Part shown: positions 4,202 through 31,682 of the stretch, one piece after another
How the letters are laid out: each line of letters begins with the position of its first letter
How positions within the stretch are numbered: the first letter of the stretch is position 1
The notes under the pieces: generated by a model
Database searches by the model: none
What the model was told of the DNA's origin: nothing
The model's input: the letters and a program-made list of their open reading frames with translations, nothing else
Program-made: the position numbers and the translations under genes
Virus record (IMG/VR): IMGVR_UViG_3300033153_013547
Coordinates: 186,001 to 250,000 of that record
Length of the DNA stretch: 64,000 nucleotides
Strand: one strand, 5' to 3'

Positions 4202-4291
4202 AGCATAACCTTGTCTTTTCTTGCAATAATTTTCAAAAAAGCCATGGTTACCAAAAACTAACTGAAGACAAAAAAGGATTAGCACTCTCTA

Positions 4292-12513: not shown

Positions 12514-15500
12514 TGATGACATTTAACAATACAACTTTTATCAGATCTTATGATGAGTGGAAATCTGACATAGCATGGTCACACTCAGATTACACTGATC
12601 TCACTCCAGACATATTCAGCACCAAGGTGCATTTATATTCATCAGATCTCAGAGATGCTATCATTGCCAGGCTGGGAGCAGAATATGCAGTTAGCAATCA
12701 TACATATAATCCTGATACAGATGATATAAAATACTACAAAAGAATCATGCCCAACACTGTCATTTATGCTAGACATGTGACAGATGGTATTAAGGCTATT
12801 TTGGATATAGATTCTAATGTTATAGCAGCCTCTGATACACTTGATCAATTGTGGGATTATACTGGTCTACTTGGTCAAGACACAATTTCTTATGTTTTAG
12901 TTTCTCAAGTGCTGGCTAATCTAAAAACAATCCATGATGTTTGTTTTTCATATAACTTTAATCTTTACAATGAATCATATCAGACGTTGTTCAATGCCAC
13001 AACAGAACAATACCGTCAACTGGGTTCTCTTTTCAACATTTTCTTTGGACATGATTATGGATCATATACAGATGCCACAACTGATTCATTGCCAATAGCA
13101 ATGCTTCCTCGTTGTGACTATGCTTTCCCATATATGCTGAATATCAATAGGTCTTTATTTGGTGATCATTCATTTGTCAATGAAGAAACAAGAAAAACAC
13201 TGAATATCAGCAACATATTTGGAAACATCAAATCCATATATCTCAATTATTATAGAGATCTTCTTACCCTTGACAACTATAAACATTCTCTATATGATAC
13301 AATCAGACTACTCATAATTGGATCAGCATTATCTGGCTCAACCCTAACTGGAGTAGGAAGATTATATCATAATAAACTAAGCCCCTATGCATATTTCAAT
13401 GTCAATAACTACACTTTCAAAGACAAAAGTTATTCCTACACTCCAGGAGTAACTGCTAACGTGTTGTATGCTGGAGACAATCTTTCCATATCTGACAAAT
13501 TGTGTTATATGGACGAATATTATGATGGAATGTATCTAACTGGCACGGACAATGCCTCAAGCATGGCCACATCAATGGGACACATTGTTATAGATAGATT
13601 TATTGGCTGGCGTTTTGATTCTGATAACACTTCATTTGTCAATAATCCTACAATTCATGTTTCAAAAGTTCATGACAATCATCCAAAAATTGAGATTATA
13701 CAAACATCTTCTTCTGATTACAGTACATCAGAACTGAAGAATATTTGTGAGAGAATCTTGGATGATTCCGTTTTTGATAGTGATAAAATTGTATTTCACA
13801 ATGCTTCCATTATAGATTACAGACTTTACTCCCGATTCAATCTAAAATACTTCTTTCCTTCTTCCACAGGAATCAAGACGGTTGTAAACATAGAAGAAAT
13901 GATGTTTTCCACTGGCGGTGCAGATATCAATATAGGAAGCACAGGATCTTATGGTACGGAAGATGATCAACTTGGTAGAAGTTTTGATTATAATACAAGA
14001 TATAGCCTGTATCCTTCATCACTAATTGATGTCTTTAACAATCTTAGTAAAATCAACAAGGTATATTTAGCAGATGGAACATTCTACACTAATAGCAACA
14101 ATACTGATCCAGAATACTTGAAATTTCCTATTCCTTTTGGCACAGTCGATGCAGAAGGCGGAAATATTAAAATAGATGAGGGAAATTTAGACCCCCTTGG
14201 TTGTTGCAATGATGATTTAGTAGGAATGTATGATGAAATAACTTACACAACCACGGCGTCTCCTCCTACCATTCATAAAATTTTCAAATCATCCAGAAGT
14301 ACAGCGGCTGATTATTCAAATTCTGATAGTCATTATTGCACTCTCGAAATTAGGCCAGATGTTGACAGTATAGAATCCATATCACAATCTAATATTTTTT
14401 ACAATGGCATCAGTCATGGTGATCTTGGTTTCCTTGATAGTAAATATTCTTATAACAACAACTATCCAGCAGCCATGGTGCTTGATGATGGATCAATCAA
14501 GGTATGTTTTTATGGAGAAATACATCCCAATGGATTTGGAACATATCCTTATTATCTTGGCCTATTCCAAATAAGGTTTTATAGAAGGCCTACATATAGT
14601 TCTACTCACTCAACAACTTTGGATCCCCTGTTCATAAATACCATCAATGCCAATGCAACTGCTGGTAAAACAGACAAGCTTATTAGATCAGCCAAGGTGC
14701 TTGCAGATGAGGTTGGTAGCACAAGTGGGGATCAATTAGCAGGTAGTATCAAAAAATTAGAAACATTTGTCAACACTTTGTTATCTAAATCAATACCACC
14801 AGGTAGCACAGCTAAACCTGCTTTGGCAACCCAAAATGACTTTACCTTGACCAACAGCAATGATTCACAAAAAACATTTGTGTCTGACAATCCTATAATA
14901 TATTATGGAATACAGAGAATTGATGGTACTGTTGCTGGCAATGAGGATAATATAGGTGATCCAATGCTTGAATATATGTGTGGAGGGTTTGGTGGATTTG
15001 AGATGGGGGATCTTAGCACATATAAAGACAACATGGTTGTTTGGCACAATGGACAGACCTATAATATTGCCAGCATTGTTGGTGGGCTAATAACTTTAGA
15101 GGCAGGAGAAGACCCAGCCATTCCTTTGGGTGATCCATATGTCATTAAGTGGAGAAATAGTGATATAAGTGAGATTTCTAAACTCAATGCAATCTTTGGT
15201 GGATCTGATGAGTTTGTAGGTAGTATAGGATATTTCCCCAAACACGACCATGCTCGTTTATTGTCAGAACTACGTATACGTTTAGATCAAGCCAAAAATC
15301 ACAAGATATTTGAAGCATACAATAGTATCAATGCACCTATTGCTATATCTGGAGAATTTGGAATTAGTATTGGTGGATCAGGAGAAGTAATAATACCAAA
15401 CTCTTCTGGTTGGACAGATGCCCCTGCTGTTATGTGTGCAGGGACTTCTTTCAGAAATCCGGGTAACAATGATTATAGTAAGGGTGATGGACCACCAATG

Positions 15501-15656
15501 ACCCTGGATTATAGTGTTATTCGCGGTAGTACTGCCATCACTGACAACTGGAAAATTGCTTGGACACATACGGGCAACTTTACATCACTAATGACGGTTT
15601 CATATCTTGCCGTCAGATCATATCTCATTTCACCTTCAATTTATACCGCAGGATAG
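12513..15656 (+). CDS. putative virion/tail-associated protein, 1047 aa (paralogue C)
   Basis: Coupled to the previous stop; DGIKAILDID motif; C-terminal WTDAPAVMC...VSYLAVR resembles a lectin-like/fibre tip domain. Confidence 0.6.
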   Translation: MMTFNNTTFIRSYDEWKSDIAWSHSDYTDLTPDIFSTKVHLYSSDLRDAIIARLGAEYAVSNHTYNPDTDDIKYYKRIMPNTVIYARHVTDGIKAILDIDSNVIAASDTLDQLWDYTGLLGQDTISYVLVSQVLANLKTIHDVCFSYNFNLYNESYQTLFNATTEQYRQLGSLFNIFFGHDYGSYTDATTDSLPIAMLPRCDYAFPYMLNINRSLFGDHSFVNEETRKTLNISNIFGNIKSIYLNYYRDLLTLDNYKHSLYDTIRLLIIGSALSGSTLTGVGRLYHNKLSPYAYFNVNNYTFKDKSYSYTPGVTANVLYAGDNLSISDKLCYMDEYYDGMYLTGTDNASSMATSMGHIVIDRFIGWRFDSDNTSFVNNPTIHVSKVHDNHPKIEIIQTSSSDYSTSELKNICERILDDSVFDSDKIVFHNASIIDYRLYSRFNLKYFFPSSTGIKTVVNIEEMMFSTGGADINIGSTGSYGTEDDQLGRSFDYNTRYSLYPSSLIDVFNNLSKINKVYLADGTFYTNSNNTDPEYLKFPIPFGTVDAEGGNIKIDEGNLDPLGCCNDDLVGMYDEITYTTTASPPTIHKIFKSSRSTAADYSNSDSHYCTLEIRPDVDSIESISQSNIFYNGISHGDLGFLDSKYSYNNNYPAAMVLDDGSIKVCFYGEIHPNGFGTYPYYLGLFQIRFYRRPTYSSTHSTTLDPLFINTINANATAGKTDKLIRSAKVLADEVGSTSGDQLAGSIKKLETFVNTLLSKSIPPGSTAKPALATQNDFTLTNSNDSQKTFVSDNPIIYYGIQRIDGTVAGNEDNIGDPMLEYMCGGFGGFEMGDLSTYKDNMVVWHNGQTYNIASIVGGLITLEAGEDPAIPLGDPYVIKWRNSDISEISKLNAIFGGSDEFVGSIGYFPKHDHARLLSELRIRLDQAKNHKIFEAYNSINAPIAISGEFGISIGGSGEVIIPNSSGWTDAPAVMCAGTSFRNPGNNDYSKGDGPPMTLDYSVIRGSTAITDNWKIAWTHTGNFTSLMTVSYLAVRSYLISPSIYTAG

Positions 15657-15837
15657 GCAAAAAGCAATAATTTACATTTTTTTGGGTATAATATACTGTG
15701 ATTCGAAAAATTATTTCAATAATTGGTATTCTCTTCTCAATATATTGTCTGTATCAATATATCAAGAAACACAAAGTCAATCCTGCTGTTCTACATACCT
15801 ACAAATTGCTAAGCAATGGGCTACGCTTAGCTATGTC

Positions 15838-16428
15838 ATGTGGGGTGAAGATGTAAATTTGACTGATAATTATATCTATGGCATTGATCCATCTATACAC
15901 AACACTGGTTTCTGTATAAGCTTGCTGGACAAGTCATCTATAATTTTTGCTACTAACATTGTGGGTACTCATGATAATTACTATGACAATGCTATCAAGA
16001 TCACCAATGTTATTGGTGATTATGTAAAAAAATATCCTCCTAAATATGCTATCATTGAGTCAGTATATTCTGGTTTCAATGCCCAAACAACAATAAAATT
16101 ATCTATGTTAAGAGGTATGCTATGTTATGTGCTAAATAGCCGTGCTAAATGCAATGTTTACACTGGATATCTCTCTACTGCCAAACATTTACTAGGCATA
16201 AAAAAAGAAACAGATTTACTATTTCCTCACATGTGGTCAGGTCCAAGGATCAAAAAATTCAATAATAAACCATCTATAAAAGACACAAAAATAGCATCTC
16301 ATAATTATATCTTTCACAATAAAGTGTGGGATAAACCAATAGATGACAACATATCTGATGCAATCATTCTTGCTCATACTTTTCAGAAATATCCCAATGG
16401 ATTTTCCAGTATAAAGGATTTTGTATAG
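15838..16428 (+). CDS. ruvC: RuvC-like Holliday junction resolvase
   Basis: RuvC catalytic motifs YGIDPSIHNTG, AIIES and DDNISDAIILA. True start is probably ATG 15838 or TTG 15859 rather than 15607. Confidence 0.8.
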   Translation: MWGEDVNLTDNYIYGIDPSIHNTGFCISLLDKSSIIFATNIVGTHDNYYDNAIKITNVIGDYVKKYPPKYAIIESVYSGFNAQTTIKLSMLRGMLCYVLNSRAKCNVYTGYLSTAKHLLGIKKETDLLFPHMWSGPRIKKFNNKPSIKDTKIASHNYIFHNKVWDKPIDDNISDAIILAHTFQKYPNGFSSIKDFV

Positions 16429-17209
16429 CATGGCAACAAAAAAGGCAAGAAAAAAAAGAAAGATCTCTGATGCCCAGAAACAAAAAGAAGCAAGAATCAC
16501 AGAATTAGTGATTGAGTACCAGAATGGTAGTGTTGCATCTGATGAATTATTGGATTACTACAACAACTTGTTTAATGCCTATAAATCTTTACTTAAAGAT
16601 GGGAATTACAGGGTCAATAGCAAAAGTGTGACGGAATTTGTCAAATTATTCATGGGAGACAAGGTATCACGTCGAAAAACAAAAAGATACAAGGTTTATA
16701 GTGAATTTTACAACACAGTAAATCATATAAGATATTATATGCAGGATCTTGATGCCAAAGACATAGAACATGAGCTCAAAGTCATATTTCTAACTCTTGC
16801 TAAAAATTGGAAGAAGATGGAGGGAATCGTATTTACAGGATACATAAATGGATTATTTCACTACTATGTCAAGGACTGGGTTAAACGCCACATGACTGGC
16901 GTTCCTAAAGACAAAGATCAAGAAGACATTAATTCTCTCACAAACGTCGTTGCTGATCATGAAGATCCTGCTGATATTGTTATTTCTGACGATATTGACG
17001 AAGACTGGGTTGTAGGACTTACTTGTAAATGGCCATGGACAGAACTAACCAAAGAAGAAAGAGAAGATGTTGTCCTACTTTGGCAAAAAAAGCTCAATCG
17101 TAAAGAATATGCCTATCTCAAGTGTATGAGGCAGTTGGCAGATGTTAGTACAAGAAAAAAACAGATCAAAGACAAGATCAGAACAATTATTAACAAAGGA
17201 AAACAATGA
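16421..17209 (+). CDS. phage sigma-70-like RNA polymerase sigma factor
   Basis: Region-2-like LVIEYQNG...ELLDYY and DIEHELKVIFLTLAKNW...FTGYI; region-4-like ELTKEERE...RKEYAYL. Confidence 0.55.
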   Translation: MYSMATKKARKKRKISDAQKQKEARITELVIEYQNGSVASDELLDYYNNLFNAYKSLLKDGNYRVNSKSVTEFVKLFMGDKVSRRKTKRYKVYSEFYNTVNHIRYYMQDLDAKDIEHELKVIFLTLAKNWKKMEGIVFTGYINGLFHYYVKDWVKRHMTGVPKDKDQEDINSLTNVVADHEDPADIVISDDIDEDWVVGLTCKWPWTELTKEEREDVVLLWQKKLNRKEYAYLKCMRQLADVSTRKKQIKDKIRTIINKGKQ

Positions 17210-17469
17210 TTGACATAAACAAAGTAAAAATGATCAAGAACAAAGTGTTGATAAAGAAAAATGCCCTGGAAGACATTGTACTAAACTCAGGTATTATTAT
17301 TACTAAAGGAGTTCAACAAAGAACCAACAATGGTGTGGTTTTGAGTGTTGGACCAAAGGCAAAATCTGTCAATGTGGGAGACCATGTATGCTTTGTGAAT
17401 TTGATCTGGGATATAAGTGCTGATTATGTTGTTGTGCTAGACAAAGATGTTATTTTGAAATGGAGTTAG
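17206..17469 (+). CDS. groES: GroES/Cpn10 co-chaperonin (copy 1)
   Basis: NKVLIK...NSGIII...GVVLSVGP...VNVGDHV...VVVLDKDVI. Confidence 0.85.
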   Translation: MIDINKVKMIKNKVLIKKNALEDIVLNSGIIITKGVQQRTNNGVVLSVGPKAKSVNVGDHVCFVNLIWDISADYVVVLDKDVILKWS

Positions 17470-18455
17470 CCCCACATCTCCAAAAAATCATTTTTTAGAT
17501 TTAGCTCTTCTCCTAATATTCCATCCATATAAGGTATAATCTGATCTATAGCATCAGATACAGCCTGTTTGACATTCTTTGTTTCAGTCATTTTTACTTT
17601 GAGACCTGTAACCAATGCTTGGGTGATAGGATGAAGAACTTCCTCCTGCTTATCAAATGTCAACGAGTAATTCATCGCATACGCGGCGTTCGATGCGACT
17701 TCAAATATATCGTCAGGATCAGGTAAATCAATTTTCCCATAGGCACTTCGTAACACCGAAACAGATAAAATGCAATCACATTCAATATCTGCATAATGCA
17801 TAAAATTACTCACACTACCATCTGGAACTAATTCCAAGGTTCCGCCATCTATAAATTTACGTGTTCCAATATCCATTGGTCTAAATACACATGGAATAGC
17901 ACTCGACGCTCGCACAAGATCAGATAGTCTCAAGGTAGGTTCGTAAACAAAATTCCACTTGTTCTCCTTGATTACCTCTTGGCTCACAAACTGAAAATCA
18001 TATGGAGGAACACCATCAATAGCTGCTGTGGTAATTAATAATGGGAGATCTACATCTATCATGAGCTTTTTGTTATAAAGTTTTTCTAAAGCTTTATGAA
18101 GGGCAGTCCCTCTCAATAAACCTGTGAAATCAGAATTCTTTCTAAACTTACCCAATATTGGTAGCCTATCTAAAATATATTGTGTAAGATCTTGATCAAG
18201 AATATTTTTCTTCTTGAATTTAGAAATAGCGTCAATCATTTGTTTAATAACAAAGGGATCTTCTAAGACTTTTTTATGATTGAGGGCAATATGAGCTGCT
18301 GCTATAGCCCCTCCAGAGGCTCCTGCAACAGCCACCAACTCTACTTTATCTTTCAGAAGATTACTAAGAATATAATAAGCACCTATACCTGCAGCATAGC
18401 TTTTTAGAGAACATACAGAAATTGATAATGCAATTTTTTTTCTACTCATTGGCAA
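17466..18455 (-). CDS. patatin-like phospholipase
   Basis: GASGG nucleophile elbow, ASSAIPCVFRP and catalytic DGG motif. Confidence 0.85.
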   Translation of the reverse strand: MPMSRKKIALSISVCSLKSYAAGIGAYYILSNLLKDKVELVAVAGASGGAIAAAHIALNHKKVLEDPFVIKQMIDAISKFKKKNILDQDLTQYILDRLPILGKFRKNSDFTGLLRGTALHKALEKLYNKKLMIDVDLPLLITTAAIDGVPPYDFQFVSQEVIKENKWNFVYEPTLRLSDLVRASSAIPCVFRPMDIGTRKFIDGGTLELVPDGSVSNFMHYADIECDCILSVSVLRSAYGKIDLPDPDDIFEVASNAAYAMNYSLTFDKQEEVLHPITQALVTGLKVKMTETKNVKQAVSDAIDQIIPYMDGILGEELNLKNDFLEMWG

Positions 18456-18468
18456 TTATGTTCTCCCT

Positions 18469-18726
18469 TTAATTTGTGTTGCCATTTTTCTTGATAAGAC
18501 TAAGAAAACCAGGAAATTTATACAGGTTTGCTGAGGAAATCACACCCAAAGTCAAAATATACAAATAGGGATCAGCAGAAATTTGTATTAGCTCAGGATA
18601 CCAAATAATCATTATTTTACTAGCCCAAGACAAAATAATATTTAGGGCTAGCAAACTAAATGAAGCTATGATCAATGACATATGCAATGCACTAATTTTA
18701 TCTGATCCTCTGCGTCTTTCTGTCAT
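18469..18726 (-). CDS. putative holin (2 TM helices)
   Basis: Charged N-terminus MTERRRGSD, two hydrophobic segments, basic C-tail; lies downstream of the endolysin. Confidence 0.5.
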   Translation of the reverse strand: MTERRRGSDKISALHMSLIIASFSLLALNIILSWASKIMIIWYPELIQISADPYLYILTLGVISSANLYKFPGFLSLIKKNGNTN

Positions 18727-18814
18727 GTTTTTGTTCCTTCTGTGTGTTGCTTATAGTAATTTGGCACACATCACTGATCCATAGGTTGGATCCGTATAAT
18801 TCACTGTTTTGTTT

Positions 18815-18892
18815 TTAGCCAGCACTAAGAGTTGCTACTGCAGCTGCTCCCAAAATAATTGCCATTATTGTATAAAGAATCAATTCAAGCAT
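18815..18892 (-). CDS. 25-aa single-TM micro-peptide MLELILYTIMAIILGAAAVATLSAG (not in ORF track)
   Basis: Hand translation; GGTGA RBS-like sequence; clear paralogue of 19902-19976. Confidence 0.6.
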   Translation of the reverse strand: MLELILYTIMAIILGAAAVATLSAG

Positions 18893-18907
18893 CGTTATCA
18901 CCATTTT

Positions 18908-19660
18908 TCAATAAGTCAGTATACCATACAAACTACTAATTTTTCTTTCTCTAATATAAACTCCTCCACCTTCTCTTGATCCTGATGGATTAGTATTCCC
19001 TTCAATAGTTACTACATAACCTGGTCTATCAGATAATCGAACGATAAATCCAATATGTCCAACTCTCTTCAGTTTTTTATAATATAACAAAAAACATGCC
19101 CCTGGCTTGATCAATTTCCAATCAGCAAGCAAAGAATTGACAGGCAACCATGTTTTAGATTTCTTAGCTGCATTTAACCAACTTGGAGTGTATCCTTTAT
19201 ATGCTGTGGGAATTTTTATAGGAGAGGATTTGCCCAAGGTTGCTGCAGCTTCTGCAATACACCACCATGTAAAGGCAGCACACCATGGTTGAGGAGAATC
19301 ATAGCCAGCAGATTTCAAATATTTCTTTACTGGTCCCCAATTGCTATTTTTAGGCACTTCTCTAACACCATTTTCTTCAAGAGCTATTTCCAGTGCCTTT
19401 TTCATCATACCTTTAGGTTTAGCAGTATTCCATCCTGGTACTTGAGAATTGTTGAGAGCCCACCAAGTTGCTGGTCCAACTATTCCATCTATTTCCAGTG
19501 GAAGATCATCTGGTCCATCACACTTGGCTTGAAAATCTAATACAGATTCCAGTGTTTTAGGACCAAATATACCATCTACTACAATCTTGAAACCAACTGA
19601 TTTCAATAGACGTTGTAGTTTTTTTACAGGTGCACCCTTAGTACCAATTGTGATCCACAT
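18908..19660 (-). CDS. endolysin: PG_binding_1 domain plus CHAP domain
   Basis: VKKLQRLL...VDGIFGPKT...DGIVGPATW (PG binding); PWCAAF, GHIGFI, TIEGNT (CHAP Cys/His); GGAGGA RBS. Confidence 0.9.
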   Translation of the reverse strand: MWITIGTKGAPVKKLQRLLKSVGFKIVVDGIFGPKTLESVLDFQAKCDGPDDLPLEIDGIVGPATWWALNNSQVPGWNTAKPKGMMKKALEIALEENGVREVPKNSNWGPVKKYLKSAGYDSPQPWCAAFTWWCIAEAAATLGKSSPIKIPTAYKGYTPSWLNAAKKSKTWLPVNSLLADWKLIKPGACFLLYYKKLKRVGHIGFIVRLSDRPGYVVTIEGNTNPSGSREGGGVYIRERKISSLYGILTY

Positions 19661-19725
19661 TGTGTCCTCCAGTAATCATATATTTATTAGTTTGTTTTTT
19701 ACTATTTTTTTCATTTATATGCTAC

Positions 19726-19842
19726 TTATTTGTTGTCTTCTTCCTTCTTCCTAACAAAAGCCCCAATCAAAGACCAGAAGACAGTTCTAAGTCCTTTCCA
19801 AATTGATTTACGAATTATTGTCCAGTTAATTTTCTTACTCAT
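19726..19842 (-). CDS. 38-aa cationic amphipathic peptide MSKKINWTIIRKSIWKGLRTVFWSLIGAFVRKKEEDNK (not in ORF track)
   Basis: Hand translation; strong GGAGGA RBS; immediately upstream of the endolysin. Confidence 0.6.
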   Translation of the reverse strand: MSKKINWTIIRKSIWKGLRTVFWSLIGAFVRKKEEDNK

Positions 19843-19901
19843 TGTTGTTATCCTCCAGTGGCCCTTCTGTTTTTCATTGTTGTTCCTCTTTTGTTGTTGT
19901 G

Positions 19902-19976
19902 TTAGGCAAAGGTGGCTACAGCTGCAATACCCAAAACAACTGCAAGCACTGTTGCAATAATTAGGTCAAAAAACAT
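19902..19976 (-). CDS. 24-aa single-TM micro-peptide MFFDLIIATVLAVVLGIAAVATFA (not in ORF track)
   Basis: Hand translation; GAGGTG RBS; paralogue of 18815-18892. Confidence 0.6.
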   Translation of the reverse strand: MFFDLIIATVLAVVLGIAAVATFA

Positions 19977-20010
19977 TTTCTGCACCTCATTTTTATTATT
20001 ATCCACATAA

Positions 20011-23000
20011 TTACCCTGCCCATATCCTTATACCAATCCACTCAACATAGACATTTATCAATTCCATAGTTGGTCCAGGGGCAGGTATATCATTTCCTAC
20101 TGCCCATACCCCTATTCTCAAGCCACCATTAGTAGCAACAGTTGGAAGTGTTATGTTCCATGAGGCTTCATACCATGTATCATTAGCCATGTTCCCAAGC
20201 ACATCTGTTCTTCCTCTGGTTGTTATGGCATTAGCATTTGAAACATCATTCCACCACAAATAGAATTTATCCAAATAACTAACATCATTCACTTTTATCC
20301 TTGCCCTAATAGTTGCATCACCACCATTAGCCCATGCTTTGATTGGCACACCTATTGATACTTCAGACTGCTCATATGTAGGAACATCATCTCTTCGTGC
20401 CATCCATGACCATATTCCATGAGCATCTGTGCATCCATAATTAGCTCCAAAAGTGAAACCATATACTGGAGCAGCAGTTACTGTGGCTGCTGCAGTTTCC
20501 CCACCATGAGCAGTCATATCAGAATACCATCTTAGCCCACCTTCAGCATCTTCAGCAAGGTCTTGACCTTGGAAAACTTCTCCATTTTCAATACCTAATT
20601 GATGAACTTTTCCATTTGGGTCTACACCTTTGAAACGATTGTCATTGCTGTCATTGATCCATTGCCCATAATTAGCAATTATATCAGGGAGACCCAGATT
20701 TTGTTCCCTAGTAGAAAGAACACCCTCAACAGTTAGTAAAGTTACTGGTGCTGCTGTTCCTATACCAATTCTATCAAGACCAGCATCCAAGAAGAATAAA
20801 TTAGCATCTCCAGTAGAAGCCATCCTCCAATTGAAATCCCCTGCAGCATTATTGATCACAGTATCTGCCGTAGGTTGTCTTAACACATATTGGGTATGAA
20901 CATCTCCAACAGCAAGATTGTTCAATACATTGTGATCAATAGCAGTTTCATCTAAATCTATAGTAACAAAGTCCCCACCATCTGTGTAGGTTAAGGGTGT
21001 TAAAGTTCTCAAAACCCCATCATTAGAAGCTGCACCAATATATCCTGCTGTTGCTGCTGCATCTATTTTTACTTTTTCATCTGCTCCTCCTCCTGCTCCC
21101 CAACTAAGGACACCCCCACCATTTGTTTGTAAGACATCTCCTGCTCCACCATCAGCATTGGGTAACACCCAAATTTGATCTGCTCCTAGAGCAGGAGCCT
21201 CAAATCCTACATAATTAGTGCCTTCATAAAATCTACACTCACCTTGATCTTTGATCAGAACGTTTGTTGCTACTTGTAATTGGTCAGTTACATTTGTGCC
21301 TGTATAAGTAATTGTTCCAGAGGTTGAGTTGTTGATCAATACACAATCATGCAACTCTACAGTGCCACTGCTACTTGACTTTACATCATCATCTGTGGCA
21401 TTGAATACACAATTATCTGCATAAATATAGGCATTATCACCAGATGCATTGCTACCATAACTACTGGCTGCTGCACTTTCAGTAACCAATGTAGAACAAT
21501 TGTATAAATACAGAAAAGCATCATTAGAGGAACCATTATCATAACAATAAAATCCCCGTCCAGAGCCGCCACCAATAGAAAGCGTAGTTTGCACATTATA
21601 ACAACGTAGAGTGGTGGCTGCCTCAGAACTTGCAGTAGTATAATAGTAAATACCATAACAAGAATTATCAGTGGAAGTAATATTTATAGTTGTGTCCCAG
21701 ATCTCACCACTGGCACACAAGAAATAAATACCTCTCTGAATGCCAGTATGACTGTTCATATTTATCTCAACATTTTGGATAAAAATGTCAGTCAAATTAT
21801 TTCCACCACTACCATCAGCTCTGATACTATAACAACCTGCAGCAGTGACATCAATAGTTAGATCTCTGATACACACATGGCTAACAATAATATCAAAAAT
21901 GCTCTTACTGTCTGTAACACAGGTAATTGTAGTAATGCCCTTGCCCTGGCCAACAATAGATATACTTTTAGTAATATCAATATTGTCTGTAATAGTATAT
22001 GTGCCAGCAGCCAATACCAGAGTGTCACCTGCAGTTGCTGCGGTTATGGCAGCATCAATATCATCAGTAATATCTAAATAAGTAATGTTGCTACCAGTAA
22101 TCTCAAGATTTTTTGTAGTTGTTTTCCCAGTGGTGATTAGGTTTTCGTCATCAAAACTGATATCTCCACCAGTGGCAGTTATCTCAAGATCTGCACTTAC
22201 TGCAGCGATATGACATATATCTGGGATAGTGGTTGTTGTAAAACTTAGATAATTAGTATTATCACCACTTGCTTTTAGATTGAAAGATCCTGTGGTTTTG
22301 AAGTCAAAATTACCACCATCTGAATTAACGCCGTCATGTTCTAAAACATCTCCATCATGAAGATGTGCAGGTATGGGCCCCCAAGACAGAACTCCTGCTC
22401 CATTGGTTATCAATAGATCATTGAGATTTCCATCAACAGCAGGTAATACCCAGATCTGGTCCGCACCTAATGCTGGAGCCTCAAATCCTACATAATTAGC
22501 ACCCTCATAAAAACGAAGTTCGTTGTTGGAACCTCCAATAAGTATGTTGCCACTTGTCTGCAAACTATGAATATCTACATCCCCATTCTTATCCCATTCA
22601 TAGAGTGTAACAACACCAATCTTCATTGTAGTAGGTATTGGTGCCCCTGGGTCTGGGTTGGCTGTTCTGATAATTTTTATCCAATAGCCTGCACTTGTTT
22701 CTGCACCACCTGGGTCTCCATTATTTGTCCAGAGAGCAGATATGTCTTCTAAGGGCCAGTGAATAAGCCCTGATTTCTGGAAACCATCTGTGGCATCTTC
22801 TGGATAAAATTGTGTCCAAGTATCTGCTGCTGTATTATACCAAAAAGTTGGGGTCACAGGCTTTGTCCCTGGTGTCCCCATAACAACTTCTATTTCTGAA
22901 AATTGAGAAGTAGAGCCAATATAAACCTCATCATTTTTTTTCACAAAACATTCTATGCCATCTATACCATCAGCCCAATTTACTCCACTATTGATTTTTC

Positions 23001-24705
23001 TACCAGCATATTCTGTCTGTGAAGGAGAGGCATAAGTGCCAATATGTTGATGAATAGGTGCAACATAAGCATGAACACCCAGCCCCACAATCTTCCCACT
23101 TGGCTCACCATTAGCAGTAGAAACATCAAAGAAATGAATATGTGAATTGGCATGTTGCAAACTTACATCAGCAATAGCATCATAAGCAGTAAAAAGTGCT
23201 CCTGCTGTGTTTGGAACAGAGAAGTCATGATGAATGTCTCCCTCTGTAATATGAATTGCATCTGTATTAGCTCTTGCTGGGCCAATAAGACCAGAAGGCA
23301 TTACAATCCTAATACCCTCAAGGCTTTCTGGAACATTAGACGCATCTACTCCACTCAAATTAACGGCTATTCCTCTAATTCTTGTGTCTGCTCCAGTGGG
23401 GTCTAAAGCATCACCCAAAATACGAAGACAAGTAAGATGAGCCTCAGCATCCAGTGCAACTTGGTTCTGTATGTCTATAATTTGATTACCTGTTCCAGTA
23501 GCAATAGATGGCTTTACTTCAAGTGCTCCTGTGAGTGGATCATTTGAACAATCTAACTTTAGAAAAGTAGCATCTACTTCTGCTTCTGTGTAATATCTAT
23601 TATCTAACTGCCCAGCATCAAGTTCTACTTGAGTATAAAATCTTGCTTCTGGGTCTTGCCAGGCAGGAATGCCTGCTGCTATACCAAGATAATCACCTGC
23701 ACTGCCTATACCAAGTCTTGTGGGTGTGCCTGTGTTGTTAGAGGAATAAATAATGTCTCCAGTGGTTGTAAGGGGGTTGGTTATTGCTGCTACCCATGCT
23801 GTATTGTTGCCATAATACATGGTGTGGGTATCTTCTGCATAAATTACTTTGCTCTCATCATCTGCTGTCCATGTTGGTAAAGTTTCTGCACGTTCTATTT
23901 CACAATATCCATTGAAATAACTTACTGGTAGCTCAAATCTTGAAAGGGTATTCCCCTCCACATATATTTCTATAGTTGGATCAACAACTGAAGAACCCTC
24001 AAGATCATCAACTATAATGGCATGTAGTTTTACAACAATTCTATCTGTCTGGCTGATCAAATGATCCCTGAGTTTGATCTCAAGATTGAATTCTTCTTGG
24101 GGTATGTATTCAGATGGTATAGTGTCAGACGTTTCTCTCTGTAATTCTGGAGATAATTGACTAATTGCCAATAGGGTTTCTACCCCAGTTTCACTCCTGG
24201 AGTAAATATCATAATATAGTCTTATGCCTCTATATTGAGCACTTATTCTCAATGCATGAATATGCATGTGAGCTATTCCATCACCAATTACTTCAACTCC
24301 AGGAACACCTACGTCTGTGATCCATTGACCTATAATATTGTCTTCATATGTAAGCACAAAACGTAGAGCTGTTACATTGTTGGGTGATCTTGTCTCCAAC
24401 ATTTCCATGTAATCAGTTACATCAGAAGTGGATTCATCTGAATATAAATAATAATATATGGAATTAGGGTTGTGTCCTAATGGTTCCCATCCAAAATAAT
24501 CTCCTGAATAATTTACTCCTTCATTTCTTTCATATATCAAGGAACCCTGTCTTCTTTCTGTCCAGTGGGGTAAAGATAACAATCTACGGATAAGTGATCC
24601 ATTTTGTGTAAGAGTATTGACTGTATTCCTAACCAACGTTTGTTGCTTGTTGATTAGTTCTCTTTTCAGGGATTCTTGTGATTGAGCCATGAACACTACA
24701 TCCAA
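20011..24705 (-). CDS. tail fibre / receptor-binding protein with pectin-lyase-like beta-helix (likely start ATG 24690)
   Basis: Fibre motifs LTTTGDIIY...RLGIG, RYYTEAEVD and RIGIGTAAP; beta-helix entry IDAAITAATAGDTLVLAAGTYTI; internal repeat. Confidence 0.8.
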   Translation of the reverse strand: MDVVFMAQSQESLKRELINKQQTLVRNTVNTLTQNGSLIRRLLSLPHWTERRQGSLIYERNEGVNYSGDYFGWEPLGHNPNSIYYYLYSDESTSDVTDYMEMLETRSPNNVTALRFVLTYEDNIIGQWITDVGVPGVEVIGDGIAHMHIHALRISAQYRGIRLYYDIYSRSETGVETLLAISQLSPELQRETSDTIPSEYIPQEEFNLEIKLRDHLISQTDRIVVKLHAIIVDDLEGSSVVDPTIEIYVEGNTLSRFELPVSYFNGYCEIERAETLPTWTADDESKVIYAEDTHTMYYGNNTAWVAAITNPLTTTGDIIYSSNNTGTPTRLGIGSAGDYLGIAAGIPAWQDPEARFYTQVELDAGQLDNRYYTEAEVDATFLKLDCSNDPLTGALEVKPSIATGTGNQIIDIQNQVALDAEAHLTCLRILGDALDPTGADTRIRGIAVNLSGVDASNVPESLEGIRIVMPSGLIGPARANTDAIHITEGDIHHDFSVPNTAGALFTAYDAIADVSLQHANSHIHFFDVSTANGEPSGKIVGLGVHAYVAPIHQHIGTYASPSQTEYAGRKINSGVNWADGIDGIECFVKKNDEVYIGSTSQFSEIEVVMGTPGTKPVTPTFWYNTAADTWTQFYPEDATDGFQKSGLIHWPLEDISALWTNNGDPGGAETSAGYWIKIIRTANPDPGAPIPTTMKIGVVTLYEWDKNGDVDIHSLQTSGNILIGGSNNELRFYEGANYVGFEAPALGADQIWVLPAVDGNLNDLLITNGAGVLSWGPIPAHLHDGDVLEHDGVNSDGGNFDFKTTGSFNLKASGDNTNYLSFTTTTIPDICHIAAVSADLEITATGGDISFDDENLITTGKTTTKNLEITGSNITYLDITDDIDAAITAATAGDTLVLAAGTYTITDNIDITKSISIVGQGKGITTITCVTDSKSIFDIIVSHVCIRDLTIDVTAAGCYSIRADGSGGNNLTDIFIQNVEINMNSHTGIQRGIYFLCASGEIWDTTINITSTDNSCYGIYYYTTASSEAATTLRCYNVQTTLSIGGGSGRGFYCYDNGSSNDAFLYLYNCSTLVTESAAASSYGSNASGDNAYIYADNCVFNATDDDVKSSSSGTVELHDCVLINNSTSGTITYTGTNVTDQLQVATNVLIKDQGECRFYEGTNYVGFEAPALGADQIWVLPNADGGAGDVLQTNGGGVLSWGAGGGADEKVKIDAAATAGYIGAASNDGVLRTLTPLTYTDGGDFVTIDLDETAIDHNVLNNLAVGDVHTQYVLRQPTADTVINNAAGDFNWRMASTGDANLFFLDAGLDRIGIGTAAPVTLLTVEGVLSTREQNLGLPDIIANYGQWINDSNDNRFKGVDPNGKVHQLGIENGEVFQGQDLAEDAEGGLRWYSDMTAHGGETAAATVTAAPVYGFTFGANYGCTDAHGIWSWMARRDDVPTYEQSEVSIGVPIKAWANGGDATIRARIKVNDVSYLDKFYLWWNDVSNANAITTRGRTDVLGNMANDTWYEASWNITLPTVATNGGLRIGVWAVGNDIPAPGPTMELINVYVEWIGIRIWAG
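21097..22521 (-). repeat. intragenic direct repeat (~48 aa; copies 21097-21240 and 22377-22521)
   Basis: RFYEGxNYVGFEAPALGADQIWVLP..DG...D.L.TNG.GVLSWG occurs twice; identical 25 nt ggagcctcaaatcctacataattag at 21194 and 22475. Confidence 0.9.
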
Positions 24706-24744: not shown

Positions 24745-25332
24745 CTATTCAACTATAAATGATTCTCCATTGGTGTTGAGTATTTTATAAGGAGGCTTTA
24801 CATTAGAAGCTGTAGCTCCACCAGTTCTAAGAGTTAGAGCCAACCTATCTATTGAACTCATATTTAGATTCATAGTTGCATATAAAGCACCATAGGCTTG
24901 TGAAACAGCAATACCAATTGCAGCAAAGTCATAAGGATGTTCAATATGAGCAAATGATCCATCAATAATATACATATTCCCAGGCCAAGCTACAATGGTG
25001 TGACCAAGAATGTAGGCTCTGTTGTTGTCTTCAGAAATAAATAGGCCATCTCCCGTGGCCTCAATCAAGTTGTTGATGAATTCCCACATAATTTGGTCAG
25101 AAGATCGAAAGTTCCCTCTTTTGTCAGTAGTTTTAGGGAATTTCATGCTGTTCTGGAGTATTTTGATAAATCTCACACAACCAGCAGAGCCAACAATAAA
25201 TCCATCCTTGGCAAAAACTTTAAGCAAATTAGAATTAGATATACAATACTCATCACCATCCACACTGATACTACTATCAGCACCCATCCAAATTACGTCG
25301 TCTTTACCATGAATACCAACAACAAGTGTCAT
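24745..25332 (-). CDS. HslV/proteasome-beta-like Ntn-hydrolase protease
   Basis: (M)TLVVG...MGADS...KVF...GSAG...AAIG pattern with N-terminal Thr; ATGA overlap with the upstream stop. Confidence 0.75.
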   Translation of the reverse strand: MTLVVGIHGKDDVIWMGADSSISVDGDEYCISNSNLLKVFAKDGFIVGSAGCVRFIKILQNSMKFPKTTDKRGNFRSSDQIMWEFINNLIEATGDGLFISEDNNRAYILGHTIVAWPGNMYIIDGSFAHIEHPYDFAAIGIAVSQAYGALYATMNLNMSSIDRLALTLRTGGATASNVKPPYKILNTNGESFIVE

Positions 25333-25745
25333 ACACAACTCCTGACAAAAGCTTTCCTGTCTAATATATTAGTCTCAATACCAAATTTCTGTAGTATATT
25401 CTCAAATATTTCTGTGTGGCTCTGTGATGATCTTATTGTAAGTGTTTTCTGTGTAGCAACTTGTGAAATTCCTTCAATCAATATAACCATGTAGTCAGCA
25501 CTATGACCAAATCTAATAATAAACACTGGTATGCTATTATTAGCCATAGCTCGTCTAAAATGGACTACTAAACCTTCTCTGCTCAAAATATATTTATTAC
25601 TTGACGTATGTTTGGCTTCTACATAGTAGCCCTGCCCACGAACATCAGATTTGTCTATAGGTTTGGCGCCGGAGGCGACCGTGCGCCTCCCGGATAGGTC
25701 CTTGGCAATGTCTTCCTCCAAAATTATCCAGTTAGGCTTTCCCAT
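25329..25745 (-). CDS. PD-(D/E)XK nuclease, Holliday-junction-resolvase-like
   Basis: E...SGA..DKSDV.....VEAKHT motif. Confidence 0.7.
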   Translation of the reverse strand: MGKPNWIILEEDIAKDLSGRRTVASGAKPIDKSDVRGQGYYVEAKHTSSNKYILSREGLVVHFRRAMANNSIPVFIIRFGHSADYMVILIEGISQVATQKTLTIRSSQSHTEIFENILQKFGIETNILDRKAFVRSCV

Positions 25746-29357: not shown

Positions 29358-30440
29358 TTACTTCCCAGATTTAGCTCTATTACATGCCTTACATAACATT
29401 TGACAATTTTCAGGAATTGTCTTTCCACCCTTATGCCATGGGGTTATGTGATCTGCTTGCATTTCATCTATCTCAAAATGCTTTTCACATTTTACACAAA
29501 TGCCCTTCTGCCTTTCATATGCTTCCCTCTTCTGTCCTTCTGTAAATGCTCTAATATTTAGGTATTTTTCTTCTCTTGTCAAAACATATGAAAAAATACC
29601 AGACTTCTTGGTCACATCCTCATCTTGCATCAATTCAAATATTTCCTTATCCAACTTAACGGGGTCTATTTGTTTGTCTTTGAATTTATTGTATAAAAGT
29701 CCAAGTGGAACTTTCTTTATTTCCCTACGATAGGTAAGAAAAGTAGTTCTTGTCCAATTTATAACACGTTGGAAATATGTCCATAGATCAAGGGCGTCTG
29801 AATTATGCTGATTACGAGCCATATAATCTTCAATATTTTTATCACTGATCCACTCAATTGCAGTTTCTAAATAATCTTGACGAATTGGAGAACCAGGCAC
29901 ATAATCATGAGCCAAATCATAAGCAGGACAACCAGTCTTACTGAAATATCTTTTTGCATCAGTCAACCAAGGACCAGTGTAAATAGCATTACGAAGTTCT
30001 TGATCTGTCAACTTCTCACCAGCTATATTGATGGTTTTAAACCAGTCTAACTTTTCCTTGTCATTTCCTTCACAAAAATAAATCATCAACTTATAGTCAA
30101 GAATCTGCTCTTTCTCTGTGTCCTCAAGATTGTGAAAATACTGATAATCCAGTGAGAAATTGCCTGCTACATATTCACAAATGCTTATGGTTCTTTGCTG
30201 TCCATCCATAACTTCATAGGAACCATCTGTGTTCTTGACCCAATACATTACATTTAGGGGAAAATCCTTTCTTACTGTTTCAATTACAGCTGCCCTTTGC
30301 TTGTCTTTGTAAATAAATTCTCGTTGATATTTTGGACGAATGTTGAGCTTTCCACCATAACCAATAACACCTTCTTCGTTGTTATTGATGTATTCATTTA
30401 CTACTTCTCTGATAGTAATTTCTTTAAGTTCTATTTTCAT
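29358..30440 (-). CDS. DUF262 (ParB/GmrS-like) plus HNH endonuclease
   Basis: RPKYQREFIY, VMDGQQRT and FKTIN...ELRNA (DUF262); CVKC...ADHITPWHKGG...CKACN (HNH). Confidence 0.9.
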   Translation of the reverse strand: MKIELKEITIREVVNEYINNNEEGVIGYGGKLNIRPKYQREFIYKDKQRAAVIETVRKDFPLNVMYWVKNTDGSYEVMDGQQRTISICEYVAGNFSLDYQYFHNLEDTEKEQILDYKLMIYFCEGNDKEKLDWFKTINIAGEKLTDQELRNAIYTGPWLTDAKRYFSKTGCPAYDLAHDYVPGSPIRQDYLETAIEWISDKNIEDYMARNQHNSDALDLWTYFQRVINWTRTTFLTYRREIKKVPLGLLYNKFKDKQIDPVKLDKEIFELMQDEDVTKKSGIFSYVLTREEKYLNIRAFTEGQKREAYERQKGICVKCEKHFEIDEMQADHITPWHKGGKTIPENCQMLCKACNRAKSGK

Positions 30441-30456: not shown

Positions 30457-30741
30457 TTATAAAATAACAACTGCATCAAGATGACCTGGTTCAAAATCTT
30501 CAAATGTAACAAAGAAATATTCGTCTTGACCATTATCAGGAGGAGATCTATTAATGATTAGGTAAGTTAGATATCCTGGTCTATATATTGCATACCATTC
30601 TTCGTTTTCGTTTCTATCTTTCTGTGATATTCTTTGTAATGATTTTTTAAACTCAGATTTTAATCTATGTTGTGCATCAATAAATGAATCAATCCCCTTC
30701 AGTAATTTTTCTAATTCACTTTTATGTTTGGCCTGTGTCAT
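30457..30741 (-). CDS. hypothetical protein inserted between MTase and DUF262-HNH
   Basis: ATGA-coupled ORF. Confidence 0.55.
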   Translation of the reverse strand: MTQAKHKSELEKLLKGIDSFIDAQHRLKSEFKKSLQRISQKDRNENEEWYAIYRPGYLTYLIINRSPPDNGQDEYFFVTFEDFEPGHLDAVVIL

Positions 30742-31682
30742 TTCATTCTCCTGTTTTTTATGAAAATTCTACTATACATTCTTTTGCCATTTATATACCC
30801 ACGCCCTTTGGAAATTTCTAAATCATACTCATTTCCCAATATTTCAAACTGCTCAGGATTGTATTTACTTAAAAATGTAATAGGCACACCCATAACACCA
30901 TCATAATCCATGGGTATATTTTTCACTTTATTAACCTCGATAGCATCGTAGTTATCATATTTTGGGTAGACCTCTTCATTTTTATAGTATTTCTTATACA
31001 AAATCAAATCTTCATGTCTTTTGGGATAGTCTAAATTGGTGAACCAACTTATAGCAGGAACCTTCCCATATTTCTTGCCAGTTTTTTCATCAATTCTATT
31101 CCATCTTTCATAATCATCAGATAGTCCAAATTCCATTACTATATTGGAGCTATTGCCCAACCAAATCTTATTTTCCTTGATCAACTTGAAAATTTCTTTG
31201 TAAGTAATAGCATTTTGATTACCAATTATTATAAATTTCTTGTCATATTCTATCAATTGATCAACATATTCCCTAAACAATGAAAAGGGTGGATTGGTGA
31301 CTACAACATCTGCTTCCTTCAATATCTCTATACATTCAGGACTTCTAAAATCACCATTTTGCTTCAAGGGGGTTTTTATGGTGTCCATCTTATTTATCTT
31401 GCCATCATCATTGATGTCAGCAATAAGTTCCAGTTTATATGACGGCTTATCTGTCTCAAAATGGGTGGCAATTAGTTTTTTTAGCCCCAGATGCTCAAAA
31501 TTCAAGGCAAAATAATTCCAGAAATTACTCTCTTCAGGATCATCACAATTGCAGAATATAATTTTACCTTTTAGGTGATCTTTATAGTGCTTCAATTCCC
31601 TTTCTATATCTGCTAATTGCGTATAAAATTCATCATTCTTTGCTTTCTTTGCTTGATGTAAATTTTTATTGGCTGCCATCAC
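30738..31682 (-). CDS. adenine-specific DNA methyltransferase, EcoRI-methylase family
   Basis: AKKAKNDEFYT, CNCDDP, GDFRSPEC, VVTNPPFSLFREY, GVMGVPITF. Confidence 0.9.
   Translation of the reverse strand: MMAANKNLHQAKKAKNDEFYTQLADIERELKHYKDHLKGKIIFCNCDDPEESNFWNYFALNFEHLGLKKLIATHFETDKPSYKLELIADINDDGKINKMDTIKTPLKQNGDFRSPECIEILKEADVVVTNPPFSLFREYVDQLIEYDKKFIIIGNQNAITYKEIFKLIKENKIWLGNSSNIVMEFGLSDDYERWNRIDEKTGKKYGKVPAISWFTNLDYPKRHEDLILYKKYYKNEEVYPKYDNYDAIEVNKVKNIPMDYDGVMGVPITFLSKYNPEQFEILGNEYDLEISKGRGYINGKRMYSRIFIKNRRMK

What the first reader, a model, noticed from the sequence alone, without database searches (positions are those of the whole stretch)
18815..19976. Unannotated micro-peptides flanking the endolysin
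Seen: two paralogous single-TM peptides, MFFDLIIATVLAVVLGIAAVATFA (19902-19976) and MLELILYTIMAIILGAAAVATLSAG (18815-18892), bracket the endolysin and align without gaps. Between them lie a 9-codon ORF (19848-19877) and a 38-aa Trp/Lys/Arg amphipathic peptide (19726-19842) with the same ACTGGAGGA RBS context as the endolysin. Established: phage phiKT gp28 (disruptin) is a cationic amphipathic peptide that replaces spanins. Inference: a spanin-free lysis system using an antimicrobial-like peptide plus minimal TM regulators.
Basis: partly seen in the sequence, partly recalled or inferred. Interest (0 to 1): 0.65.

Follow-up and report, generated by a model that had tools for sequence, protein, structure and literature searches.

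The report
Paired micro-membrane peptides flanking phage endolysin
Two tiny, related, uncalled genes for 24- and 25-residue membrane peptides sit on either side of the cell-wall-digesting enzyme of a 261-kb orphan phage and look truly protein-coding, but what they and a neighbouring cationic 38-residue peptide do in cell lysis is inferred, not shown.

Summary

The two micro-ORFs (pepA 19902-19976, pepB 18815-18892) are very probably real, anciently duplicated coding genes:
- Their ungapped alignment scores 61, against 18.9 +/- 5.2 for shuffles (0 of 20,000 reach it).
- Differences fall 12/3/13 on codon positions 1/2/3 (p = 0.0015).
- Their codon usage is in the top 1% of spurious small ORFs.
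- Both have Shine-Dalgarno sites and fill unusually long gaps.

- The 38-aa peptide is cationic (+7) with three Trp, but no more amphipathic than its own shuffles. It has no similarity to phiKT gp28, and evidence that it codes is weak.
- "Spanin-free" is unproven. The host envelope is unknown, and a lipoprotein gene lies elsewhere in the genome.

No relatives were found anywhere, and read data were unavailable. Function therefore rests on position and sequence character alone.

The parts
20011..24705 (-). 1564-aa ORF directly upstream of the cassette. Probably a virion fibre or receptor-binding protein, judged from internal repeats seen in its translation. It matches no family.
19902..19976 (-). 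pepA: 24-aa micro-ORF. Residues 5-24 form an uncharged hydrophobic stretch, with one Asp at position 4, no Lys or Arg, and no Cys. GAGGTG lies 6 nt before the ATG.
19848..19877 (-). 9-codon ORF with GAGGA 6 nt upstream. Its last codons form the ribosome-binding site of pep38, and its stop lies 5 nt before the pep38 ATG. Its start region resembles that of pep38. It may be a coupling or leader ORF, or chance.
19726..19842 (-). pep38: 38-aa ORF with net charge +7 and 3 Trp. Its longest uncharged stretch is 11 residues, so it is not a membrane span. GGAGGA lies 8 nt upstream. Its coding status is uncertain.
18908..19660 (-). Endolysin, 250 aa: N-terminal PG_binding_1 and C-terminal CHAP domains (Cys127, His202). 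It has no signal or membrane segment, so it needs a hole-forming holin.
18815..18892 (-). pepB: 25-aa micro-ORF and paralogue of pepA. Residues 4-25 are uncharged, with one Glu at position 3 and no Lys or Arg. GGTGA lies 5 nt before the ATG.
18469..18726 (-). p85: 85-aa membrane protein. It has a basic N-terminus, one strong hydrophobic span (about residues 14-42), a second weaker one (about 55-70) and a basic C-terminal tail. It is the best holin candidate and has no relatives.
17466..18449 (-). Patatin-like phospholipase, 327 aa: G-x-S-x-G at 43-47 and D-G-G at 201, but no Gly-rich oxyanion-hole motif. It is the last gene of the operon, and its end overlaps the convergent Cpn10-like gene by 4 nt.

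Best explanation
Window 17466-20010 (minus strand) is the lysis cassette at the 3' end of a late operon of a 261-kb orphan jumbo phage. Its gene order is pepA, 9-codon ORF, pep38, endolysin, pepB, p85, patatin-like phospholipase.

Shown:
- pepA and pepB are homologous.
- Their divergence has the signature of selection on a translated hydrophobic peptide.
- Both have start signals.
- The endolysin is soluble and so needs a holin.

Inferred:
- pepA and pepB are made late, together with the endolysin, and insert as single helices into the cytoplasmic membrane.
- They act there through helix-helix packing as accessory subunits or timing modulators of the hole-forming step, most likely with p85 as the main holin.
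- The packing face would be their conserved small-residue face (the Ala/Gly/Ala/Thr ladder in the C-terminal half, which is the best conserved part).

pep38 may be a cationic, Trp-rich membrane-active peptide. The patatin-like enzyme may attack membrane lipid. Either could serve the last step of envelope breakdown. Both roles are conjecture.
For: Homology of pepA and pepB:
- Ungapped score 61 against shuffles 18.9 +/- 5.2, with 0 of 20,000 reaching it.
- They are each other's only hit in the genome.

Translation and selection:
- DNA identity is only 59%, and 6 of the 11 aligned codon pairs that encode the same residue differ synonymously. Even so, differences fall 12, 3 and 13 on codon positions 1, 2 and 3 (Fisher p = 0.0015).
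- Only this frame is open in both copies.
- Codon-usage scores are 15.3 and 14.6 bits. These are reached by 0.8-0.9% of 1,164 spurious ORFs of 20-30 codons.
- Ribosome-binding sites lie at 5-6 nt.

Genomic setting:
- The median gap between ORFs is 10 nt. The two gaps holding these ORFs are 350 and 181 nt, and only 9 of 313 gaps reach 300 nt.
- There is no structured RNA signal (z 0.00 and -0.18), no Rfam match, and no terminator-like site inside the cassette.
- Among 84 loci with distant CHAP endolysins, only 2 have any hydrophobic micro-ORF within 700 nt, and none has a flanking pair.

Cassette:
- PG_binding_1 plus CHAP endolysin without a membrane segment.
- p85 is small, has hydrophobic spans and basic ends, and lies next to the endolysin.
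- Small-xxx-small pairs are conserved in both peptides.
Against: - There is no conservation outside this genome. The endolysin's best relative is 41% identical. p85 and the patatin-like protein are orphans.
- A motif scan of IMG/VR and of metagenome contigs found only matches inside unrelated longer frames.
- tblastn against 50,697 phage records found nothing.
- The peptides carry no Lys or Arg and lack the charged C-terminal tail typical of holins and antiholins.
- Nothing shows that they meet p85, or that they act in lysis rather than merely sit there.
- TM-like small ORFs with a ribosome-binding site do occur elsewhere in the genome: 5 outside and 5 inside large ORFs.
Confidence: 0.4

Rival explanations
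1. The phage has no spanin. pep38 is a disruptin-like cationic antimicrobial peptide that breaks the outer membrane after the endolysin has acted. pepA and pepB are minimal membrane regulators.
For: - pep38 has net charge +7, like gp28 (+7, 56 aa), and lies directly upstream of the endolysin behind a strong GGAGGA site.
- It is one of only 8 small cationic ORFs with a good ribosome-binding site outside large ORFs in 261 kb.
- No lipobox ORF lies near the cassette and no Rz families are found.
Against: - pep38's hydrophobic moment is not above its shuffles, whereas gp28's is.
- It has no alignment to gp28.
- Its codon score is uninformative and it has no relatives.
- The host may lack an outer membrane; its envelope type is unknown.
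- A lipoprotein gene with neighbouring anchored proteins exists elsewhere in the genome.
- A phospholipase in the cassette is an alternative agent.
Confidence: 0.15
2. The patatin-like phospholipase, paired with the small membrane protein p85, is the accessory lysis factor. It degrades membrane phospholipid once the holin has fired, as proposed (not shown) for the patatin plus holin-like cassette of phage WO, or as the lipid-cleaving LysB does in mycobacteriophages. On this reading the micro-ORFs are side players. This does not exclude the best explanation.
For: - The Pfam Patatin match scores 47.4 bits against a cut-off of 27.7.
- The G-x-S-x-G serine and D-G-G aspartate are present.
- The gene follows p85 directly and ends the operon.
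- PMC9203015 describes a putative patatin plus holin-like lytic cassette in phage WO.
Against: - The Gly-rich oxyanion-hole block is absent, and the Pfam match starts only at profile position 20.
- There are only weak, sub-threshold hits to CBASS lipases.
- It has no relatives and no usable model (pLDDT 36).
- A role in lysis is untested even for phage WO.
- It could instead act in entry, in superinfection exclusion or in host lipid metabolism.
Confidence: 0.25
3. pepA and pepB are themselves the hole formers or triggers: a minimal holin and antiholin pair, or peptides that depolarise the membrane in the manner of type I toxins. p85 would then have another role.
For: - Each has one hydrophobic helix long enough to span a membrane (20-22 uncharged residues).
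- A paralogous pair recalls holin/antiholin pairs.
- Both lie directly beside the endolysin.
- They carry small-residue packing motifs.
Against: - At 24-25 aa they are well below characterised holins. From my own recall, not checked here, those are roughly 60 aa and more.
- They have no charged C-terminal tail and no basic residue.
- They match no Pfam family, the holin-like toxin family included.
- A more conventional candidate, p85, is present.
Confidence: 0.12
4. pepA and pepB are real membrane micro-proteins, but their job is not lysis. They could, for example, modulate a host membrane complex or provide superinfection exclusion. On this reading their position around the endolysin is an accident of module shuffling.
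For: - The coding evidence is the same as for the best explanation.
- Small single-helix proteins commonly regulate larger membrane proteins (general knowledge; reviews listed were not read).
- They lack the typical features of holins.
Against: - Both copies, not just one, lie within 20 nt and about 240 nt of the ends of the endolysin gene, in one operon.
- Such micro-ORFs are rare beside other CHAP endolysins.
Confidence: 0.18
5. The micro-ORFs are not translated. On this reading the similarity of pepA and pepB is a remnant of a duplicated non-coding or formerly coding segment, and pep38 and the 9-codon ORF are chance frames in AT-rich spacers.
For: - No relative, no read evidence and no family match.
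- The pep38 codon score is reached by 25% of spurious ORFs.
- Chance TM-like ORFs with ribosome-binding sites exist inside large genes.
Against: For pepA and pepB:
- Position 2 of the codons is spared (3 differences against 12 and 13) despite 41% DNA divergence.
- Codon usage is in the top 1%.
- Both frames are still open with intact starts.
- The gaps are 18 to 35 times the median gap.
- There is no RNA structure signal.

For pep38 this rival remains about even.
Confidence: 0.15

Closest known systems
Disruptin gp28 of Escherichia phage phiKT (bioRxiv 10.1101/515445)
   Same: pep38 is a small peptide with the same net charge (+7). Like gp28 it lies in the lysis cassette beside the endolysin and has no lipoprotein signal or membrane span.
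   Different: - pep38 is 38 aa, gp28 is 56 aa.
- There is no sequence similarity.
- gp28 is significantly amphipathic and pep38 is not.
- pep38 is Trp-rich (3 Trp against 1).
- gp28 lies between endolysin and holin, whereas pep38 lies upstream of the endolysin.
- gp28's function was shown by complementation. Nothing has been tested for pep38.
Holin and antiholin pairs, and two-component holins, of tailed phages (lambda S105/S107, P1 LydA/LydB, Ms6 Gp4/Gp5; named from my own knowledge)
   Same: These are small membrane proteins encoded beside the endolysin. They come as related or paired products that set lysis timing by interactions within the membrane.
   Different: - pepA and pepB are 24-25 aa and have no basic residue or charged tail.
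- They flank the endolysin rather than lying in tandem.
- They match no holin family.
- p85 fits the holin description better.
Putative patatin plus holin-like lytic cassette of phage WO (PMC9203015)
   Same: A patatin-like phospholipase gene lies next to a small holin-like membrane protein gene, near the tail genes.
   Different: Phage WO has no endolysin, whereas this phage has a canonical PG_binding_1 plus CHAP endolysin. There is no detectable homology of p85 or the patatin protein to anything. The lytic role is a hypothesis in both cases.
Small hydrophobic type I toxins and 'holin-like toxin' peptides of bacteria (Ibs, TisB, Fst, Hol-Tox; named from my own knowledge)
   Same: Peptides of 19-35 aa that consist of little more than one hydrophobic helix and act in the cytoplasmic membrane.
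   Different: pepA and pepB match no family and carry no basic residue. No antisense RNA gene is evident. They are expressed from a late phage operon with ordinary ribosome-binding sites.

Membership tests
Disruptin (phiKT gp28 type), for pep38 | Small peptide under 80 aa with net charge of at least +4 | tested here: met
   38 aa, net +7. This is the cut-off used in 10.1101/515445.
Disruptin (phiKT gp28 type), for pep38 | Predicted amphipathic helix | tested here: not met
   The maximum hydrophobic moment over 11 to 26 residues is reached by 15-47% of shuffles. For gp28 the figure is 0.3-2%.
Disruptin (phiKT gp28 type), for pep38 | Sequence relationship to gp28 | tested here: not met
   BLASTP finds no alignment at E <= 100. 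gp28 itself has almost no homologues, so this says little.
Disruptin (phiKT gp28 type), for pep38 | Replaces spanin function (complements lambda Rz/Rz1; phage lacks spanins) | not testable with these tools
   This needs genetics. Absence of a spanin is itself inconclusive.
Holin (functional class), for p85 | Small size, at least one membrane span, charged C-terminal tail, encoded next to the endolysin | tested here: met
   85 aa with a hydrophobic span at about 14-42, a weaker one at about 55-70, and basic N- and C-termini. It lies 181 nt downstream of the endolysin. No holin family matches.
Holin (functional class), for pepA and pepB | Membrane span plus hydrophilic, charged C-terminal domain | tested here: not met
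   A span is present (20-22 uncharged residues). There is no Lys or Arg and no tail.
Holin-like toxin / type I toxin Pfam families, for pepA and pepB | Match to a family profile | tested here: not met
   hmmscan against Pfam at E <= 10 finds nothing. NCBIfam and PHROGs also find nothing of note.
Two-component or unimolecular spanin | Lipoprotein (lipobox Cys) gene within or next to the cassette, with an N-terminally anchored partner | tested here: inconclusive
   - No Cys occurs in pepA, pepB, pep38 or p85.
- A genome-wide lipobox scan finds one good candidate, at genome 50776-51180. It lies beside two anchored proteins, 155 kb from the cassette.
- Pfam PF03245 and PF10721 are absent.
Patatin-like phospholipase (PF01734) | Profile match above the curated cut-off, plus the Ser-Asp dyad motifs | tested here: met
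   47.4 bits against a cut-off of 27.7. G-x-S-x-G at 43-47 and D-G-G at 201.
Patatin-like phospholipase (PF01734) | Gly-rich oxyanion-hole block near the N-terminus | tested here: not met
   No such motif is present, and the profile match begins at position 20. Activity is therefore uncertain.
Modular endolysin (PG_binding_1 + CHAP) | Both domains above cut-off, with the catalytic Cys and His | tested here: met
   PF01471 scores 47.2 bits and PF05257 scores 31.7 bits. Cys127 and His202 are present. Several PHROG endolysin families also match.

The most novel reading that the evidence does not exclude
This is a lysis cassette of a new design. Two paralogous peptides of 24-25 residues, with no basic residue, would form the membrane timing device, either as the smallest holin/antiholin-type pair yet seen or as obligatory subunits of the orphan holin p85. 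The final envelope step would be done not by spanins but by a cationic Trp-rich peptide and/or a patatin-like phospholipase.
Probability: 0.1. Interest if true: 0.75.

Novelty: new variant of a known kind. Interest (0 to 1): 0.42.

Why it matters
Phage lysis cassettes are a main source of membrane-active proteins and of antibacterial leads, and gene callers miss genes under about 30 codons.

The internal evidence here is a diverged paralogue pair whose substitutions spare codon position 2. It shows that two uncalled 24-25-codon genes beside an endolysin are probably real even without any relative. If they prove to tune or form the membrane lesion, they would set a new lower size limit for lysis-control proteins.

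The same cassette places a patatin-like phospholipase next to a canonical endolysin and a holin candidate. That would make the patatin-based lysis idea raised for phage WO testable in a system that still has a normal endolysin.

As it stands, this is a well-founded gene prediction with a conjectural function in an uncultured phage of unknown host.

Tried and rejected
Searches for relatives, all blank or too distant:
- blastn of the cassette against phage records found nothing.
- Endolysin-based loci in IMG/VR are only 32-38% identical and not syntenic.
- Patatin and DnaE polymerase patterns in IMG/VR found nothing.
- The DnaE piece matches phage records at no more than 34% identity.
- Word searches for p85 and the patatin protein returned only the proteins themselves.
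- A full HMMER search for p85 returned itself plus one repetitive 424-aa protein.
- A degenerate DNA motif for the conserved core of pepA and pepB gave 14 IMG/VR matches, all inside frames of 69 aa or more.
- tblastn of pepA, pepB and pep38 against 50,697 phage records found no match. BLAST's low-complexity filter may hide hydrophobic queries.

Steps that could not be run:
- The word search refuses queries under 40 aa, so the micro-peptides could not be searched that way.
No reads were laid and there is no expression evidence.
I repeated it from window references.
- I sent no complex prediction. pepA and pepB are shorter than the 30 residues the tool asks for, and orphan membrane helices without alignments would give no usable verdict.

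Uninformative results:
- Atlas look-alikes of p85 and pep38 scored 0.78-0.83, which is chance level.
- The AlphaFold model of the patatin protein from a single sequence has pLDDT 36 and is unusable, so no fold search was made.

Ideas rejected:
- Read-through or recoding that would join pepA to the 9-codon ORF. All three stop codons are in use, and the genome has only tRNA-Thr and tRNA-Leu, with no suppressor.
- A structured RNA in either spacer.
- A shared promoter or terminator signal. Counts equal those of shuffles.
- A recurrent start-site motif shared by the 9-codon ORF and pep38. It is not general in the genome.
Full report
WHAT THE WINDOW IS

The window is bases 186001-250000 of a single 261,124-bp virus record with direct terminal repeats. 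G+C is about 36%. All three stop codons are used. The genome has two tRNA genes and no suppressor.

It is an orphan. The cassette DNA matches no phage record. A DnaE-type polymerase piece finds phage relatives at 34% identity at most. Neither that piece nor the patatin gene finds a relative in IMG/VR.

ANATOMY OF THE REGION

Everything lies on the minus strand, downstream of a 1564-aa ORF (20011-24705) that looks like a virion fibre but matches no family. The order is:
- pepA, 19902-19976.
- A 9-codon ORF, 19848-19877.
- pep38, 19726-19842.
- The endolysin, 18908-19660.
- pepB, 18815-18892.
- An 85-aa membrane protein, p85, 18469-18726.
- A patatin-like phospholipase, 17466-18449. Its end overlaps by 4 nt the end of a convergent Cpn10-like gene (17206-17469, plus strand).

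The endolysin has PG_binding_1 and CHAP domains above Pfam's cut-offs and matches several PHROG endolysin families. Cys127 and His202 are present. It has no membrane or signal segment, so it needs a hole-forming holin. No terminator-like site lies inside the cassette, and promoter-like sites are no more frequent than in shuffles.

CHECK OF THE OBSERVATION

pepA has GAGGTG 6 nt before its ATG and pepB has GGTGA 5 nt before its ATG. pep38 and the endolysin both follow ACTGGAGGA. That 9-mer occurs three times in the genome.

The longer frames that start at GTG 20006 and ATG 18904 have no such sites. The similarity of the two peptides begins right at the proximal ATGs, which favours the 24- and 25-aa products.

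None of the micro-ORFs is present in the 15-billion-protein collection, so they are indeed uncalled.

ARE pepA AND pepB MORE THAN CHANCE? YES

1. With a one-residue offset they align without gaps: 11 of 23 identical, score 61. Shuffles that keep composition give 18.9 +/- 5.2, with a maximum of 45 in 20,000. The match is therefore not just two hydrophobic strings.
2. In six-frame searches of all 261 kb, each peptide is the other's only hit (E 3e-4, next 1.3).
3. The DNA is only 59% identical, and 6 of the 11 aligned codon pairs that encode the same residue differ synonymously, so the duplication is old. Yet differences fall 12, 3 and 13 on codon positions 1, 2 and 3 (Fisher p = 0.0015). Only this frame is open in both copies. 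Sparing of position 2, which sets hydrophobicity, is what selection on a translated membrane helix predicts.
4. Codon-usage scores of 15.3 and 14.6 bits are reached by under 1% of 1,164 spurious ORFs of like length.
5. The median gap between ORFs is 10 nt. The two gaps that hold these ORFs are 350 and 181 nt, and only 9 of 313 gaps reach 300 nt.
6. The spacers show no RNA structure signal (z 0.00 and -0.18) and no Rfam match.
7. Beside 84 distant CHAP endolysins, only two loci have any hydrophobic micro-ORF within 700 nt, and none has a flanking pair.

I put the chance that both are translated genes at about 0.75-0.8.

WHAT THE PEPTIDES LOOK LIKE

Each has one acidic residue at position 3 or 4, then 20-22 uncharged residues (Kyte-Doolittle 2.4-2.7 over 19). 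Neither has Lys, Arg or Cys.

The best conserved part is the C-terminal half, which is rich in Gly, Ala and Thr and forms small-xxx-small pairs. That composition is typical of tight helix-helix packing. The link to packing is an inference from general knowledge of membrane helices.

No Pfam, PHROG or NCBIfam family matches.

pep38

It carries net charge +7 and three Trp. Its longest uncharged stretch is 11 residues, so it is not a membrane span.

Its best helical moment is ordinary for its composition (reached by 15-47% of shuffles), whereas phiKT gp28, taken from the phage record, beats 98-99.7% of its shuffles.

There is no alignment to gp28 and no PDB, Pfam or Atlas lead. Its codon score of 7.6 bits is reached by a quarter of spurious ORFs.

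In its favour:
- It has a six-base ribosome-binding site at good spacing.
- It lies directly before the endolysin.
- Only eight small cationic ORFs with a good site lie outside large ORFs in the whole genome.

I rate it about even as a gene and about 0.15 as a disruptin-like agent. It also warns that picking candidates by size and charge is noisy.

THE 9-CODON ORF

It has its own GAGGA site. It ends 5 nt before the pep38 ATG, and its last codons are the pep38 ribosome-binding site. It is in frame with pepA behind a TAA. I found no basis for read-through. It may couple translation into pep38, or it may be chance. I leave this open.

p85 has a basic N-terminus, a strong hydrophobic span, a second weaker one and a basic tail, and it lies next to the endolysin. 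That is the usual description of a holin. It is an orphan even in an exhaustive HMMER search.

The next gene is a patatin-like phospholipase (47.4 bits against a cut-off of 27.7). Its serine and aspartate motifs are present, but it lacks the Gly-rich oxyanion block. It hits CBASS lipases only weakly and below threshold, has no relatives and gave no usable model.

A patatin plus holin-like lytic cassette has been proposed, not proven, for phage WO (PMC9203015). Here the same pairing sits beside a normal endolysin.

SPANINS

None of the four small products has a Cys. A lipobox scan of the genome gives one good lipoprotein ORF, at genome 50776-51180, beside two N-terminally anchored proteins and 155 kb from the cassette. 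Two Rz Pfam families are absent.

The host is unknown, so whether an outer membrane must be crossed is unknown too. 'Spanin-free' is possible but not established.

MECHANISM I THINK MOST LIKELY (confidence 0.4)

pepA and pepB are made late, together with the endolysin. They insert as single helices in the cytoplasmic membrane. Through their conserved small-residue face they pack against each other or against p85 and so tune when the lethal hole forms.

Homology, the signature of translation and the cassette context are shown. Membrane insertion, partners and effect on timing are inferred.

The rivals, with their evidence and what would refute each, are given in the Rival explanations section:
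- the phospholipase as the envelope agent;
- the pair as a minimal holin;
- a membrane role outside lysis;
- no translation at all.

LIMITS

No relative of any cassette gene beyond the endolysin's distant kin exists in the collections searched, so there is no external conservation test. 

VERDICT

This is a sound prediction of two new micro-genes, plus one doubtful one, in an unusual orphan lysis cassette, with function still conjectural. Interest 0.42. Novelty: a new variant of a known kind (small membrane proteins of phage lysis cassettes).

Noticed in passing
window 51297-57142 (-): A DnaE-type DNA polymerase III alpha is encoded in three separate ORFs (55910-57142, 52865-54541, 51297-52418). 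They match successive parts of one PHROG profile (positions 42-440, 433-793, 794-1042). The ORFs lying between them (54600-55910 and 52384-52875) match no family. This could be a split gene, or introns or other insertions.
   Followed up: partly
genome 48500-53800 (locus L101), outside the window: A cluster of envelope-anchored proteins on the minus strand:
- a 134-aa lipoprotein candidate (L101 2277-2681);
- two proteins with N-terminal anchors (1740-2264 and 1241-1750);
- a 203-aa protein with hydrophobic segments at both ends (3-614).
They are possible spanin-like or exclusion proteins.
   Followed up: partly
window 17466-17469: The patatin-like gene (minus strand) and a Cpn10/GroES-like gene (17206-17469, plus strand) converge and overlap by 4 nt. 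No terminator-like site lies between them.
   Followed up: no
window 15607-16428 (+) and 25329-25745 (-): There are two different Holliday-junction resolvase-like genes (a RuvC-like PHROG and a second resolvase PHROG) within 10 kb. A gene with a weak HslV-type peptidase match lies at 24745-25338.
   Followed up: no
window 158-15656 (+): A run of very large ORFs (627, 379, 338, 1835, 904 and 1047 aa) has no significant PHROG match. The only hit is a marginal one for the 627-aa ORF (E 0.0019). This fits a deeply divergent virion or injected-protein module.
   Followed up: partly
loci L004-L013 and others, about 70-115 nt upstream of the CHAP match: Many marine IMG/VR relatives of the CHAP domain carry a short hydrophobic segment in frame upstream of the catalytic domain. 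This suggests signal-anchored endolysins, unlike the soluble one here.
   Followed up: no
window 29358-30440 (-): A 360-aa ORF has a C-terminal HNH endonuclease domain that matches many PHROG families. Two DNA methyltransferase-like genes lie nearby (30738-31682 and 35026-36009).
   Followed up: no
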